DNA of 63,221 nt, counting the filler, from Olpidium bornovanus S191 (lineage: Eukaryota > Fungi > Olpidiomycota): assembly GCA_017911155.1 (NCBI GenBank). It is 23 parts of 23 records of this genome, joined end to end, with 100 filler letters (N's around TTAATTAATTAA, not from the genome) between each part and the next. Parts side by side here need not be neighbours in the genome. Positions count along the whole stretch, not along the records: positions 16,405 to 19,985 come from JAEFCI010011771.1; 22 more parts are not named here. The stretch is one strand, 5' to 3'. The notes under the pieces are model-generated. The model saw only the letters and a list, made by a program, of their open reading frames with translations. It ran no database searches and was not told the DNA's origin. Position numbers and translations under genes: made by a program. Below, piece after piece: positions 16,405 to 19,985 of this stretch; position 1 is the stretch's first letter, and each line of letters begins with the position of its first letter.

Positions 16405-17414
16405 CATGCCTGCAAGAGCTCCGTCTGTGCGACGTCTCCGGCGTCGACGACGAGGCTTTGGAAGTGCTGGCCGCGCTTTTTTCCTCAGGCTCTCTGCGGG
16501 TCCTGGAGCTGGCCAGGCCCGCCAACGGCAGTAACAATACGATCCCGATCACCCCGTTGGCGCTGATGCGGCTGATCACTGCCGTGGGACACGGACTGGA
16601 AGAAATCCAGCTCACGGACTGTGGCACGGCCGTCACCGATGAGGTCGTCGTCGAAGGCGTCGCGCGTCTATGTCCGCGGCTGGTCGAGGTGGGAATCTCA
16701 GGAAGCGAAGGCATTTCTTCTGAAGCTCTCAAACTCTTTTTCACGGTGAACCTGGAGAGCGCCTCCAGGATCCGGACTCTGGAACACGACAGCAGGGTGT
16801 GCAGAACAGGTTTTCAGAGGATCGATTTCTCGAGGCTTGGCTTACCGGCTTCGACGGAGAAGACGGGAGAACGGCTCTTACAGGATGAGCCGGAAGAGGA
16901 CGATGACGATGACGAAGGCGACGGGCGCCGCGCTTGTCGCGCGGCGGAGGGCGTCAACGACGAGGTCCTGGCAGCGCTTTCCTGCCATTCGGGTGGGACG
17001 CTGGTCGAGCTCAACATCAGCGGCGCCGACGGTCTTGTCCACGGGCTCGACGCGCTATTCGATCCGAAAGAGCCGCTGGGCGCGGACAAAAACAAGCCGA
17101 CATTCGTCGTCCCTCCTCCCTCATCCGGCGGCGACACCTCGCGCACAGCGGCGGCGGCGATCCGCAACAAGGTGGAGGCGGGAGACCGCGATCCGGCACT
17201 GCCTGCCCTTCGCATCCTCGACGTTTCGTGGGTCCGGGCCGTCGACGATGCGGCCCTTGACCGTCTCGCCGTGGAGGCCCCTGAGATCCGCGAAATCAGC
17301 GTGTGGGGGTGCCACCGCGTCTCCGATTGCGCCAAGGTGCGGACACGGAGCGGCTTTGCCAAGCTGATCGGTCGCGAGCGCGAGCCCGAGTCTGCTGCCC
17401 TCCAAGGGAGGTGA
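16405..17414 (+). CDS. RAD7: Rad7 LRR nucleotide-excision-repair protein, C-terminal part (5'-partial)
   Basis: RNI-like LRRs (LQELRLCDVSGVDD, LEEIQLTDCGTAVTD, LVELNISG). The C-terminus LRILDVSWVRAVDDAALDRL...IREISVWGCHRVSD...LIGRE matches the Rad7 end (LDLGFVRCVDD...VFGDNLVT...LIGRQ). Confidence 0.75.
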
Positions 17415-17625
17415 ACCGCCGTCACCGCCCCCCCGCTCGACCCTCCAATTGGGACAGGGAATCATTAATGCAAACAAAACAAGAACGGTTTGCTCCAGAT
17501 ACACATAAAAAAATATCCCGCCCAAAATCGTCCCTTCTCATAAGGTTGTTGTGCTTTCTATTCTCGCTTTGATTCGCAGATTCGCACAAGTTTGTTGCTT
17601 GACCACGCTCGCAATTTCCCGTCTT

Positions 17626-17626
17626 C

Positions 17627-17683
<57 letters not shown>
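17626..17683 (+). repeat. (CT)n microsatellite
   Basis: Near-perfect CT dinucleotide run in intergenic DNA. Confidence 0.9.
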
Positions 17684-17685
<2 letters not shown>

Positions 17686-18121
17686 CTCCCTCCTATCTTC
17701 TTTACCCAACGTTTTGCCCCGCTTTGGCCCTATGTCCCGCGTTTTTGCGGCCAGTCTCGCACGACCGAGAAAAGCGGAAAAGGCCGGGCATAACGTCGCT
17801 GAAACCACTTTTTTCGTTTCGTTTCTTTTTTTTCTTCTTCCCGCTGGAATGCTACTCGAGCCACAATATTTCTTGGCTGGAAAGCGTTGGTATTTTGCCG
17901 TGCGGAAGCGTCCGGTTCGGTCGATCGGAAGTCGTAATATTGCTGTCCTCCTTTCTGTCAAAAAGAAGCCAAACTTCGCGGGGTTCCGTGTTTTTTCACG
18001 CATCAGTGCCTGCCAGAAAAAAACGTGACCAAAATAACGGCCGCCAGAGAAGGCAGACACCGAATGCACCGTTTTTCATTTTTTCAATTTTATCGTATTT
18101 TATCTTTTCTCGGCCCCTTCG

Positions 18122-19676
18122 TCACGTAACGTCCGGCTCCGGACGACGGGCCGTGTAGCATTTTTCAAGGTCCAGCTTGTTGTGGTGGTGGTACTTTCCG
18201 TCCTTCGGGCCGAACCACACGTGTCGCGGATTTATGCACTTGCCGGGCTTCACATCCTGCAAGCGGCCTCCCGTTTTTCTCTCGAACTCCTCCGCGGACC
18301 GGGCGGCCCGCTTTATCTCCGCATCGCTCGCGCCGCCCCCGGATGTCGGCCTCCCGCCTGCGTGGTTAACGATCGCGCCGCCGGGTTCGAGGTTCGACTC
18401 CTGGTCGAGCATTCGCATCTCCAGAGGCGTGGGCGGCTTGCGGAGCTCTTCGACGTTTCCGTCCAGCAGCAGGCGGACCGCTTCGAGAAGACCCCTGCGC
18501 CGACTCGCCTCCCAAAGCCGCGCTCGAGGGCCCGCGCGGGCGAGGGCGGCCCGCTCCAAGACTCTTCTGAACGCTGCTGCGCGCTTGGCGACCGTCCCCG
18601 CGGAAACGAGCATCGCCCGGCCGGCCGGGTAGCATAGGTCGCTGTCGCTGACGCCGGGCGCGAGGGTGCTGATCGCGACGGCCACTGCGGCGGCGGCGCA
18701 GCCGCCAGGAAGGTACCCCTCGACCTCGCCGGCCTCGTTCGCGATGCTCAGAACCGAAAGGGCGCGGGCGGACAACAGCCGCCTGTGCCTGTCCTGCTCG
18801 TCGGGCGAGATGCCGTCCGGCAGCGTCCCGCAGCCCTGGACGCACTTGTCCAGCATTTCGGCCGCGCTTGCGAAGCCGCCGGTGATCCGGCACTCCTTCA
18901 AGATTTCTCTCACTTGCTTGTAGACTGCAGCAAAGCGCCAGACCGTCGTGCCCAATAACCTCTGCTCGAGGGGAAGGATGAAAAAAAAGAAGCATTTCGT
19001 CAAAATAAGTAACTCTCGCTACTCGCCGCGTCCGCGCGTGAACGAGCATAACAGTCGAGGGGAGAAATAAAAAAAAACGACAGGCGTACTGCCACTTGTC
19101 TCATTGTCAATGACAACTCCTCTTCCATCGCCACGACGTACGCGCACGCGGCGATTGCCAACGACCGTCTCGGCGTGCGGGCTGGCCTCTTGGACACCAC
19201 GCACTCCCAGAGGAACTTGATGCGGTCGCGCTTCTGAATGAGGTTCAACCCAGAAGATATTTGTCGGATCTCGGCCAATGTCCTTAACTGCGGGGGCAGG
19301 AACGGAGAAACCCGGGGTGAGGCAGAAGGGTTAGAAGCCGAGTTCGTCAGAGCCAGACCAGGGCAAAAAGAAAATAAATAAATAAAGGTCGCCCAAGCCA
19401 AAGCCGTACGTTCTTCATCTCCTGCTCCGAAGGGTGCCCGCGGGCGGTCCCGGACGACGGCACGGTCGTGGCGCTGGCGGGGAGGAACAGACCGCCGTCT
19501 GGTCCGGCGACGAGAGCTCCTTCGCTCAGGACGAGACCGCAGGAAGCGCAGAAGGACTCGTTGCCGTCCGCCGAGGAGGCGGTTTCGGAGCTGCCGCACT
19601 GCTGGCACCGGCTCCGGGCGGACCCTCTGCTGCCTGCAGGAAGAGGGTCCCCTGGAAGCGGCGGCGATGGTCGCAT
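18122..19676 (-). CDS. TFIIB-related factor, BRF2-like (Pol III TFIIIB subunit), apparently complete, 3 exons, roughly 435 aa
   Basis: Zn ribbon RCQQCGSSE...FCASCGLVLSEGALV. Cyclin fold 1: LAEIRQISSGLNL...IAACAYVVAMEEELSLTMRQVA|RLLGTTVWRFAAVYKQVREIL. Cyclin fold 2: RLLSARALSVLSIANEAGEVEGYLPGGCAAAAVAVAISTL. C-terminal ASDAEIKRAARSAEEFER resembles the BRF2 TBP-anchor SDSEIEQYLRTPQE. Splice sites at 19409, 19288 and near 19085/18965 are in frame. Confidence 0.72.
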
Positions 19677-19925
19677 GACCGGAAGCGTGCGCGCGCGGCC
19701 GACTCGGTTTTTTTTTTTTTTTTTTTTTTCCCTTGGGGCCCCTTCAGGGCGGGCCGGGGGGGGGGGGGGGGCCCGGGCGGGGGGGGGGGGGGGGGGGGGC
19801 CTTTTTTCCCCTTCCTTTCCTTCATTTTCTCCCTTTGTTTTGTGTTGGTGTTTTGGGGAGGCGACCGGAGCGGCGCTGAGGCGACCGGAGCGGCGGGGGG
19901 GGGGCCGGGGCGGCGGGGGGGGGGC

Positions 19926-19985
<60 letters not shown>

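What the first reader, a model, noticed from the sequence alone, without database searches (positions are those of the whole stretch)
18122..19676. Apparent BRF2 orthologue (third TFIIB-family factor) in a fungus
Seen in sequence: a complete 3-exon gene of about 435 aa with a Zn ribbon, two cyclin folds and a C-terminal SD.EI...R...E segment. It lacks the TFIIB B-reader (D...EWRTF), the Brf1 IVSEVTF motif and the long Brf1 C-terminus. Blocks line up with human BRF2: LTMRQVA/LTMGAIC, SIANEAGEVEGYLP/ELANETWLVTGRHP, ASDAEIKRAAR/ISDSEIEQYLR. Established: BRF2 serves gene-external type-3 Pol III promoters (U6, 7SK, with SNAPc) in vertebrates, and model yeasts have only Brf1. Inference: early-diverging fungi may keep a BRF2/SNAPc-type Pol III system lost in Dikarya. 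The position matching the redox-sensing LPPC pin reads KPPT, so that cysteine switch would be absent.
Basis: partly seen in the sequence, partly recalled or inferred. Interest (0 to 1): 0.82.

Follow-up and report, generated by a model that had tools for sequence, protein, structure and literature searches.

The report
BRF2-like Pol III factor in Olpidium
This is a real, expressed and spliced gene of the root-parasitic fungus Olpidium bornovanus for a very divergent TFIIB-family transcription factor that most resembles BRF2, the factor animals use to transcribe U6-type small RNA genes. Whether it is a true BRF2 orthologue is likely but not proven.

Summary
On the minus strand, 19676..18122, there is a three-exon gene for a 434-aa protein, identical to the NCBI hypothetical protein BJ554DRAFT_3846 of Olpidium bornovanus. 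RNA-run contigs from four runs carry both predicted splice joints exactly.

The protein has a four-cysteine TFIIB zinc ribbon. An AlphaFold model shows two confident cyclin repeats followed by a short helical tail. It lacks the TFIIB B-reader motif, the Brf1 C-terminal domain and any Rrn7 signature.

The BRF2 reading is partly supported:
- Human BRF2 is the only significant solved-structure sequence hit (E 3.6e-7) and the top Foldseek PDB hit.
- Arabidopsis PTF2, the plant BRF2 homologue, is the top Swiss-Prot model.
- The nearest fungal relatives are from Basidiobolus and Mortierella. They carry sub-threshold BRF2-type second-repeat Pfam hits, and the Basidiobolus protein has a clear BRF2-type C-terminal TBP anchor.
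- A connector about 11 residues longer between the repeats is shared with BRF2.

The margins over Brf1 are small. The protein's own anchor match is marginal (p about 0.03). The LPPC pin cysteine is absent. No tree with real BRF2 or TFIIB references could be built. A separate Brf1, SNAPc and the U6 promoters in Olpidium could not be checked. I rate it a new, divergent member of a known kind, of moderate interest.

The parts
19410..19676 (-). Exon 1 (89 aa): start codon at 19676, N-terminal tail, zinc ribbon, linker, and the start of cyclin repeat 1.
   Evidence: Sequence reading. The splice joint 19287|19410 is seen in contigs of four runs. Pfam PF08271 scores 29.1 bits.
19527..19616 (-). Coding region of the TFIIB-type zinc ribbon (residues 21-50; C24, C27, C43, C46).
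   Evidence: Pfam PF08271 covers residues 23-60. Model strands lie at 32-34 and 41-43. All four cysteines are invariant across the 16-sequence alignment A2.
19288..19409 (-). Intron 1 (122 nt, GTACGG...CAG).
   Evidence: Skipped in contigs of X1, X2, X4 and X3, with CT..AC on the plus strand.
19090..19287 (-). Exon 2 (66 aa): the core of cyclin repeat 1, including the LTMRQVA block.
   Evidence: HMMER alignment to human BRF2.
18962..19089 (-). Intron 2 (128 nt, GTACGC...CAG).
   Evidence: Skipped in contigs of all four runs.
18122..18961 (-). Exon 3 (279 aa plus TGA): the end of cyclin repeat 1, the long connector, cyclin repeat 2 and the C-terminal tail.
   Evidence: ORF. 100% identity to P0001. 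Covered by RNA contigs.
18509..18805 (-). Cyclin repeat 2 (residues 208-306).
   Evidence: AlphaFold helices 208-231, 240-255, 261-271 and 276-306, pLDDT about 85-95. Aligned to BRF2 residues up to 240 by HMMER and to BRF2/TFIIB cores by VIA-align.
18428..18439 (-). There is no cysteine here.
   Evidence: Read directly. P332 is invariant among the four fungal sequences. No significant similarity to the BRF2 C-terminal domain.
18263..18328 (-). Residues 367-388 (SDAEIKRAARSAEEFERKTGGR): a predicted amphipathic helix and candidate TBP anchor.
   Evidence: Model helix 368-384, pLDDT about 60. Smith-Waterman score to the human BRF2 anchor 37-mer is 34, reached by 2.6% of shuffles.

Best explanation
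The gene encodes a fast-evolving member of the BRF2/PTF2 branch of the TFIIB family. That would make it a second, short TFIIIB subunit of Olpidium bornovanus.

By analogy with human BRF2, the inferred mechanism is as follows. The zinc ribbon reaches into RNA polymerase III. The two cyclin repeats clamp the TBP-TATA complex. A C-terminal helix holds TBP. Together these recruit Pol III to TATA-containing, gene-external promoters such as U6.

The vertebrate redox-sensing cysteine of the LPPC pin is not present, so that regulation would be missing.

What is shown: the gene, its splicing and expression, the domain architecture, and the best resemblance to BRF2. What is inferred: orthology, the Pol III role, TBP anchoring and the promoter class.
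For: - The gene is real and expressed. Both splice joints are exact in contigs of four runs, and the protein is identical to the NCBI Olpidium protein.
- Architecture: zinc ribbon, two confident cyclin repeats and a short helical tail in a 434-aa protein. Human BRF2 has 419 aa.
- Human BRF2 is the only significant hit among all solved-structure sequences: E 3.6e-7, residues 20-258 against 3-240. No TFIIB, Brf1 or Rrn7 hit appears.
- The top five Foldseek PDB hits are BRF2 chains (6.7e-7 to 2.4e-6), ahead of TFIIB (3.5e-6) and yeast Brf1 (3e-5).
- The top Swiss-Prot model is Arabidopsis PTF2, O81787 (1.7e-10). Girbig et al. list this protein as the plant BRF2 homologue.
- VIA-align gives the longest alignment with BRF2: 228 residues, model 85-374 against chain 65-364.
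- ESM Atlas features: the two best clusters are chordate BRF2 at 0.95, and the third is a plant cluster carrying PF21886. The C-terminal half alone is nearest to a plant PF21886 cluster at 0.93.
- The nearest eukaryotic relatives in a 1.8-billion-protein library include Basidiobolus P0005 and Mortierella P0006. Their second repeat hits PF21886, the BRF2-like C-terminal cyclin repeat (E 4.7e-5 and 5.3e-4), rather than the generic TFIIB repeat.
- P0005 carries a clear BRF2-type TBP anchor at its C-terminus: score 52 against 25 +/- 3.7, reached by 0 of 500 shuffles. Its best solved-structure hit is BRF2.
- Olpidium repeat 1 is closest to these two fungal proteins (z 12 and 10, against 6.5 for a Brf1). 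The three fungal lineages form a clade with support 89/99.
- The connector between the repeats is 51 residues in Olpidium, 53 in Basidiobolus and 52 in human BRF2, against 41 in a Brf1 and 35-46 in archaeal TFBs.
Against: - All similarities are weak. Only five non-self hits reach E<=0.001 in the library, all at 35-39 bits. They include a canonical Brf1 (P0003, 37.9 bits) and an archaeal TFB (37.0 bits), at the same level as the fungal BRF2-like proteins.
- The fungal profile scores BRF2 at 52.8 bits and yeast Brf1 at 52.2 bits.
- In the Swiss-Prot models, human BRF1 ranks second, ahead of BRF2.
- VIA-align Z is 12-13 for every TFIIB-family member and even for cyclins.
- P0001 itself has no PF21886 hit, and its PF00382 hit is only E 0.13.
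- Its C-terminal tail has no significant match to BRF2 or to the Basidiobolus tail (z 0.2). The anchor motif is marginal (p 0.026) and lacks the aromatic residue at the position of Y in EQYL.
- The LPPC pin cysteine is absent.
- The tree has long branches and no BRF2 or eukaryotic TFIIB references. A clade of Olpidium with Brf1 is not rejected (p-AU 0.26).
- A separate Brf1 in Olpidium, SNAPc and the U6 promoters were not testable.
Confidence: 0.58

Rival explanations
1. It is a lineage-specific TFIIB/Brf-like paralogue of early-diverging fungi (Olpidium, Zoopagomycota, Mortierellomycota) that arose independently of animal BRF2. The short length and long connector would be convergent. Its polymerase and its targets would be unknown.
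For: - Similarity to BRF2, Brf1 and archaeal TFB is at about the same low level.
- The tail of P0001 is not significantly like that of BRF2 or of Basidiobolus.
- Mortierella proteins lack the anchor motif.
- Plants show that the TFIIB family readily spawns lineage-specific paralogues (PMC7865254).
Against: - The Basidiobolus member has a highly significant BRF2-type C-terminal anchor and a PF21886 hit.
- For P0001 alone, BRF2 is the only significant hit among solved structures.
- BRF2 or PTF2 top three independent kinds of search.
- The connector length matches BRF2 to within two residues.
Confidence: 0.22
2. It is Olpidium's own Brf1 orthologue, strongly diverged and shortened, serving all Pol III genes as the only Brf factor.
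For: - A canonical Brf1 (P0003) is among the five best library hits.
- Human BRF1 ranks second in the Swiss-Prot fold search.
- Olpidium plus Brf1 as a clade is not rejected.
- The presence of another Brf1 in Olpidium could not be checked.
Against: - There is no Brf1 homology domain (PF07741) and only about 130 residues follow repeat 2.
- Canonical Brf1 is strongly conserved: the flatworm protein scores 175 bits against yeast Brf1. P0001 gives no hit to yeast Brf1 at E<=10.
- The connector is of BRF2 length, not Brf1 length.
- Repeat 1 is closer to the fungal BRF2-like proteins.
- Brf1 was found in every eukaryote sampled by Girbig et al., so loss of the canonical form would be exceptional.
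Confidence: 0.1
3. It is the Pol I factor Rrn7/TAF1B, whose cyclin folds are notoriously divergent and escape TFIIB profiles.
For: It has a zinc ribbon plus two cyclin folds that Pfam TFIIB models barely detect, and its length of 434 aa is comparable.
Against: - No hit to the Rrn7 Pfam models or to the Rrn7 zinc-ribbon model at E<=10.
- No Rrn7 or TAF1B chain among the sequence hits or the top 50 Foldseek or VIA hits.
- No Rrn7/TAF1B entry in the top 30 Swiss-Prot models.
- The fungal relatives hit PF00382 and PF21886.
Confidence: 0.04

Closest known systems
Human BRF2 (TFIIIB50; PDB 4ROC, 5N9G, 8ITY)
   Same: - Size: 434 against 419 aa.
- Order of parts: zinc ribbon, linker, two cyclin repeats, short helical tail.
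- It is the only significant solved-structure sequence hit and the top Foldseek PDB hit.
- The connector between the repeats has the same length, 51 against 52 residues.
- Blocks in repeat 1 (LTM...) and repeat 2 (ANE....G..P) align.
   Different: - Identity is only about 18-19%.
- There is no LPPC pin cysteine (KPPT at 330-333), so no C361-type redox switch.
- The TBP-anchor motif is only marginally recognisable and lacks the central aromatic residue.
- There is an extra tail of about 40 residues with a K-L-D motif shared by the fungal proteins.
- The SNAPc partnership is untested.
Arabidopsis PTF2/BRP5 (O81787), the plant BRF2-like subfamily
   Same: - It is the best structural match among reviewed UniProt models (E 1.7e-10).
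- Plant clusters carrying PF21886 are among the nearest language-model matches, including for the C-terminal half alone.
- Girbig et al. treat it as the plant BRF2 homologue.
   Different: - PTF2 is longer (527 aa).
- It was described as plant- and alga-specific (PMC7865254).
- Its polymerase specificity is itself unsettled.
Basidiobolus meristosporus ORY08317.1 (P0005) and Mortierella KAF9986957.1 (P0006), unnamed fungal TFIIB-type proteins
   Same: - They are the nearest fungal relatives.
- They form a clade with the Olpidium protein at 89/99 support.
- They share the long inter-repeat connector and a K-L-D tail motif.
   Different: - Identity is only 26-27%.
- P0005 has a clear BRF2-type C-terminal anchor, Olpidium only a marginal one, and Mortierella none.
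- They have sub-threshold PF21886 hits, which P0001 lacks.
Brf1 (TFIIIB70/90)
   Same: It has a zinc ribbon and two cyclin repeats. The profile of the fungal proteins scores yeast Brf1 almost as high as BRF2. The Pol III context is likely shared.
   Different: - There is no Brf1 homology domain (PF07741).
- The protein is 150-250 residues shorter.
- The connector is 10 residues longer.
- P0001 alone has no significant match to yeast Brf1.

Membership tests
TFIIB family (TFIIB/Brf1/BRF2/Rrn7) | N-terminal four-cysteine zinc ribbon of TFIIB type | tested here: met
   PF08271 scores 29.1 bits on exon 1 (cut-off 29) and 25.8 bits on the whole protein. C24, C27, C43 and C46 are invariant in alignment A2.
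TFIIB family (TFIIB/Brf1/BRF2/Rrn7) | Two tandem cyclin repeats | tested here: met
   The AlphaFold model has five-helix repeats at 84-199 and 208-306 with pLDDT 85-95. Foldseek gives probability 1.0 to TFIIB-family cores and VIA-align gives Z 12-13. The sequence signal is weak (PF00382 E 0.13).
BRF2 (TFIIIB50) / BRF2-like | Closest to BRF2 among TFIIB-family proteins (reciprocal-type test) | tested here: inconclusive
   In favour: P0001 hits only BRF2 among solved structures, BRF2 tops Foldseek PDB, and BRF2 clusters are the top Atlas features. Against: the fungal profile scores BRF2 52.8 against Brf1 52.2 bits, the library hits to Brf1, TFB and the fungal proteins all lie at 35-39 bits, and no reference tree was possible.
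BRF2 (TFIIIB50) / BRF2-like | BRF2-type C-terminal cyclin repeat (Pfam PF21886) | tested here: inconclusive
   P0001 has no PF21886 hit at E<=10, either whole or as fragments. Its fungal relatives P0005 and P0006 hit it below the curated cut-off: 23.9 and 20.5 bits against 27, E 4.7e-5 and 5.3e-4.
BRF2 (TFIIIB50) / BRF2-like | Short C-terminal domain without Brf1 homology blocks; total length about 400-450 aa | tested here: met
   434 aa, with no PF07741 hit. About 130 residues follow repeat 2.
BRF2 (TFIIIB50) / BRF2-like | Molecular pin with conserved LPPC and the redox cysteine (human 357-363, C361; PMC4671959) | tested here: not met
   There is no LPPC. The nearest look-alike is KPPT at 330-333, without a cysteine. 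The Basidiobolus and Mortierella relatives also lack it. This rules out membership of vertebrate BRF2 in the strict, redox-sensing sense. It does not rule out the wider BRF2-like branch, where conservation of the pin is not established.
BRF2 (TFIIIB50) / BRF2-like | C-terminal TBP anchor domain (human 374-419) | tested here: inconclusive
   Smith-Waterman of the human 380-416 segment against P0001 scores 34 at residues 367-388, reached by 2.6% of shuffles. The predicted helix 368-384 has pLDDT about 60. There is no HMMER hit of the tail to BRF2. The same test is clearly positive for Basidiobolus P0005 (52, 0 of 500 shuffles).
BRF2 (TFIIIB50) / BRF2-like | Coexists with a separate canonical Brf1 in the same genome | not testable with these tools
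The assembly is a binned metagenome of 29 Mb with BUSCO 75%, so absence would not be informative either.
BRF2 (TFIIIB50) / BRF2-like | Works with SNAPc at PSE plus TATA gene-external promoters (U6, tRNA-Sec) | not testable with these tools
   There was no access to SNAPC1/3/4 queries or to Olpidium U6 loci. The piece itself holds no Rfam family.
TFIIB (Pol II) | Conserved B-reader (EWR.F) and B-linker; high conservation; about 320-350 aa | tested here: not met
   The alignment consensus GPEWRAF reads GPDGGLF in P0001. There is no significant hit to any eukaryotic TFIIB chain.
Brf1 | Brf1 homology domain (PF07741) and a strongly conserved cyclin core | tested here: not met
   There is no PF07741 hit and no hit to yeast Brf1 at E<=10. 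By contrast, a flatworm Brf1 scores 175 bits against yeast Brf1.
Rrn7/TAF1B | Rrn7-type zinc ribbon and Rrn7 cyclin domains | tested here: not met
   There are no Rrn7 Pfam hits at E<=10. No Rrn7 chain appears among the sequence or fold hits.

The most novel reading that the evidence does not exclude
Olpidium, Basidiobolus, Mortierella and probably other early-diverging fungi retain the ancestral opisthokont BRF2-dependent, gene-external (type 3, SNAPc-assisted) Pol III promoter system. Dikarya, flies and nematodes lost it. In these fungi the system runs without the vertebrate redox-sensing cysteine. BRF2 would then be ancient, shared by plants, fungi and animals, rather than a vertebrate invention, and the redox switch would be a later add-on.
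Probability: 0.3. Interest if true: 0.65.

Novelty: new member of a known kind. Interest (0 to 1): 0.45.

Why it matters
BRF2 was introduced as a vertebrate-only factor (Gouge et al. 2015, PMC4671959). A later survey extended it to plants but found none in the seven fungi it sampled, all of them Dikarya, and it sampled no early-diverging fungus (Girbig et al.). I found no open paper that links Brf2 with early-diverging fungi.

A BRF2-like factor in Olpidium, Basidiobolus and Mortierella would fill that gap. It would push the origin of the second TFIIIB back to at least the opisthokont ancestor. It would place the loss of BRF2 within fungi somewhere on the lineage leading to Dikarya.

It would also give experimentally tractable fungi, such as Mortierella and Basidiobolus, in which to ask three questions. 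How did U6-type promoters move from gene-external to gene-internal control? What does a BRF2 without the redox pin do? Does SNAPc travel with it?

The evidence for this particular protein is moderate. Much of the general idea is already implicit in the Pfam family PF21886 and in the plant data.

Tried and rejected
- Three word-indexed protein searches returned only the query proteins themselves and archaeal TFBs. The queries were exon 3, the fungal alignment A1, and Basidiobolus residues 1-310. No named BRF2, TFIIB or Olpidium Brf1 sequences could therefore be collected, and the requested four-family tree could not be built.
- The exhaustive library search gave only five weak non-self hits.
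- The metagenome scan gave 13 loci. Twelve matched only the zinc-ribbon region and the thirteenth (L009) matched residues 14-252 at 22% identity. None was used.
- Pfam on the cyclin fragments of P0001 gave nothing useful.
- The tails of P0001 and P0005 alone found no BRF2 in the solved-structure sequences.
- Shape searches in the ESM Atlas, VIA-align Z scores and AlphaFold DB clusters did not discriminate among TFIIB-family branches.
- I suspected a three-residue indel before the GR.P motif that would separate BRF2 from Brf1 and TFIIB. The alignment did not bear it out, so I dropped it.
- Rfam found no RNA gene in the piece.
- The Rrn7 and canonical TFIIB readings were rejected on the membership tests above.
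Full report
THE GENE

The piece 16405-19985 is the whole 3581-bp contig JAEFCI010011771.1 of the Olpidium bornovanus assembly GCA_017911155.1. Its GC content is 62%.

I read the following gene on the minus strand:
- Exon 1, 19676..19410.
- Intron 1, 19409..19288.
- Exon 2, 19287..19090.
- Intron 2, 19089..18962.
- Exon 3, 18961..18122.

Both introns begin GTACG and end CAG. The 434-aa product is identical to the database protein P0001, named 'hypothetical protein BJ554DRAFT_3846 [Olpidium bornovanus]'.

Laying contigs of four public runs on the locus confirmed the model. Three of the runs are guessed to be RNA, from at most three studies. Every run joins 18961|19090 and 19287|19410. One 1500-nt contig spans the full coding region plus both untranslated ends. 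The only sequence difference is a synonymous T>G at 18413.

DOMAINS

Pfam finds only the TFIIB zinc ribbon. It scores 29.1 bits on exon 1 against a cut-off of 29, and 25.8 bits on the whole protein. The four cysteines are C24, C27, C43 and C46.

Pfam barely sees the cyclin repeats. Repeat 1 gives PF00382 at E 0.13 and repeat 2 gives nothing.

An AlphaFold model was built on a 16-sequence alignment (mean pLDDT 68.7). It gives two confident five-helix repeats, at 84-199 and 208-306, with pLDDT mostly 85-95. Helices follow at 310-329, 334-344, 368-384 and 417-426. Foldseek matches the model to TFIIB-family cores with probability 1.0, and VIA-align gives Z 12-13.

The would-be B-reader reads GPDGGLF where the family consensus is GPEWRAF. 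There is no Brf1 homology domain and no Rrn7 signature.

WHICH BRANCH OF THE FAMILY: EVIDENCE FOR BRF2

- Among all sequences of solved structures, P0001 has one significant hit, human BRF2. The E-value is 3.6e-7, over residues 20-258 against 3-240. TFIIB, Brf1 and Rrn7 chains are all in the Protein Data Bank and are not hit.
- The five best Foldseek PDB hits are BRF2 chains (6.7e-7 to 2.4e-6), ahead of TFIIB (3.5e-6) and yeast Brf1 (3e-5).
- The best reviewed AlphaFold model is Arabidopsis PTF2, O81787. Girbig et al. list this protein as the plant BRF2 homologue.
- VIA-align's longest alignment is with BRF2: 228 residues, model 85-374 against chain 65-364.
- ESM Atlas features put two chordate BRF2 clusters first at 0.95 and a plant PF21886 cluster third. 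The C-terminal half alone is nearest to a plant PF21886 cluster at 0.93.

WHICH BRANCH OF THE FAMILY: EVIDENCE AGAINST A FIRM CALL

- The protein is extremely divergent. An exhaustive search of 1.8 billion representatives gave five non-self hits, all at 35-39 bits. They were a metagenomic fragment, a canonical flatworm Brf1 (P0003, 175 bits to yeast Brf1), an archaeal TFB, and two fungal proteins.
- A profile of the fungal proteins scores BRF2 at 52.8 bits and yeast Brf1 at 52.2 bits.
- Human BRF1 is second in the Swiss-Prot fold list.

THE FUNGAL RELATIVES

The two fungal hits are Basidiobolus meristosporus ORY08317.1 (P0005, 466 aa) and Mortierella antarctica KAF9986957.1 (P0006, 535 aa).

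- Their second repeat hits Pfam PF21886, 'BRF2-like C-terminal cyclin repeat', at E 4.7e-5 and 5.3e-4. Both are below the curated cut-off. It does not hit the generic TFIIB repeat.
- P0005's best solved-structure hit is BRF2, at 40 bits against 31 for Brf1.
- I tested the human BRF2 anchor segment 380-416, as printed, against each protein by Smith-Waterman with shuffles. Basidiobolus scores 52 against 25 +/- 3.7, reached by 0 of 500 shuffles, at its very C-terminus. That is a convincing BRF2-type TBP anchor. Olpidium scores 34 at residues 367-388, reached by 2.6% of shuffles. Mortierella scores nothing.
- Domain by domain, Olpidium repeat 1 is closest to Mortierella (z 12) and Basidiobolus (z 10). 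The Brf1 gives z 6.5 and the TFBs z 7 or less.
- In a small ML tree the three fungal lineages form a clade with support 89/99. The grouping with Mortierella survives removal of Basidiobolus. Without Mortierella, Olpidium, Basidiobolus and Brf1 form an unresolved trio. Forcing Olpidium with Brf1 is not rejected (p-AU 0.26).
- One architectural character agrees with BRF2. The stretch from helix 5 of repeat 1 to the GR.P of repeat 2 is 51 residues in Olpidium, 53 in Basidiobolus, 52 in human BRF2 and 69 in Mortierella. It is 41 in the Brf1 and 35-46 in archaeal TFBs.

THE C-TERMINAL TAIL

Gouge et al. define a BRF2-specific pin (LPPC, 357-363, with redox-sensing C361) and a TBP anchor (374-419).

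Olpidium has KPPT at 330-333 and no cysteine there, and the fungal relatives also lack LPPC. The equivalence of KPPT with the pin rests on position only.

The tail alone has no significant match to BRF2 or to the Basidiobolus tail. The candidate anchor helix 368-384 is modelled with pLDDT of about 60. It lacks an aromatic residue where BRF2 has Y in EQYL.

So the vertebrate redox switch is absent, and TBP anchoring by the tail is plausible but not shown.

MECHANISM PROPOSED

Most likely (about 0.58), this is the BRF2-like subunit of a second TFIIIB. The inferred roles are as follows:
- The ribbon reaches into Pol III.
- The cyclin repeats sit on TBP-TATA.
- The tail helix sits on TBP.
- The complex serves TATA-containing upstream promoters.

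Only the architecture and the resemblance are shown. The polymerase, the partners and the targets are inferred from human BRF2.

The rivals are an independent fungal paralogue (0.22), a degenerate sole Brf1 (0.10) and Rrn7/TAF1B (0.04).

WHAT COULD NOT BE DONE

No tool searches the Olpidium genome. A separate Brf1, SNAPC1/3/4 and the U6 flanks therefore remain unchecked. The assembly is a conservatively binned metagenome of 29 Mb with BUSCO 75%, so absences would prove little in any case.

LITERATURE AND NOVELTY

- BRF2 was called vertebrate-only in 2015.
- Girbig et al. found homologues in plants and vertebrates but none in the seven Dikarya they sampled. They sampled no early-diverging fungus.
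- The plant BRP5/PTF2 branch had been described as plant- and alga-specific.
- I found no open paper that connects Brf2 with early-diverging fungi.
- The existence of the Pfam family PF21886 shows that a broader BRF2-like family is already recognised.

I therefore rate this as a new, divergent member of a known kind, with moderate interest (0.45). The stronger evolutionary claim is a retained type-3 Pol III system in early-diverging fungi. I give it a probability of about 0.3.

Noticed in passing
window 16405-17414 (+): This is the 3' part of a convergently oriented neighbour gene, cut by the contig edge. It is called as a 331-aa product in the public annotation. Its C-terminus matches the leucine-rich-repeat region of yeast DNA repair protein Rad7 (PDB 5zb2_A, E 1.6e-5) and, more weakly, F-box/LRR protein 17. 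It has no Pfam hit.
   Followed up: partly
window 19141 (minus strand, inside exon 2): Run X2 holds a minor contig that joins 18961|19142 at depth 10.6, against 36.4 for the main joint. It uses an alternative GTACGT donor inside exon 2. This removes 52 nt of coding sequence and shifts the frame.
   Followed up: no
window 18413: T>G on the plus strand in all three runs guessed to be RNA, but not in run X3. On the gene strand this is CGA>CGC, a synonymous change in an arginine codon. It is probably a strain difference.
   Followed up: no
window 19707-19985: The contig end upstream of the gene consists of long T runs and then very long G runs with short direct repeats (ggcgaccggagcggcg occurs twice). 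This may be low-complexity sequence or an assembly artefact. The promoter of the gene cannot be read from this record.
   Followed up: no
window about 17627-17685: A (CT)n microsatellite of about 55 nt lies in the 0.7-kb region between the 3' ends of the two convergent genes.
   Followed up: no
P0005 residues 428-464 (Basidiobolus meristosporus ORY08317.1): An unnamed fungal protein carries a clear match to the human BRF2 TBP-anchor segment at its C-terminus (score 52 against a shuffle mean of 25, reached by 0 of 500 shuffles). It also has a sub-threshold PF21886 hit. This is better evidence for a fungal BRF2 orthologue than the Olpidium protein itself provides.
   Followed up: partly
P0001 417-419, with P0005 and P0006/P0013 (alignment A1): A short basic K-L-D motif ([KR]KLD[LQ]) is invariant in the tails of the Olpidium, Basidiobolus and Mortierella proteins. 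However, it lies before the anchor-like motif in Basidiobolus and after it in Olpidium. Its meaning is unknown.
   Followed up: no
ESM Atlas, query P0001 185-434: The second-nearest cluster to the C-terminal half (0.90) is an unnamed 247-aa protein cluster whose commonest phylum is Basidiomycota. This hints that BRF2-like remnants might exist in some Dikarya.
   Followed up: no
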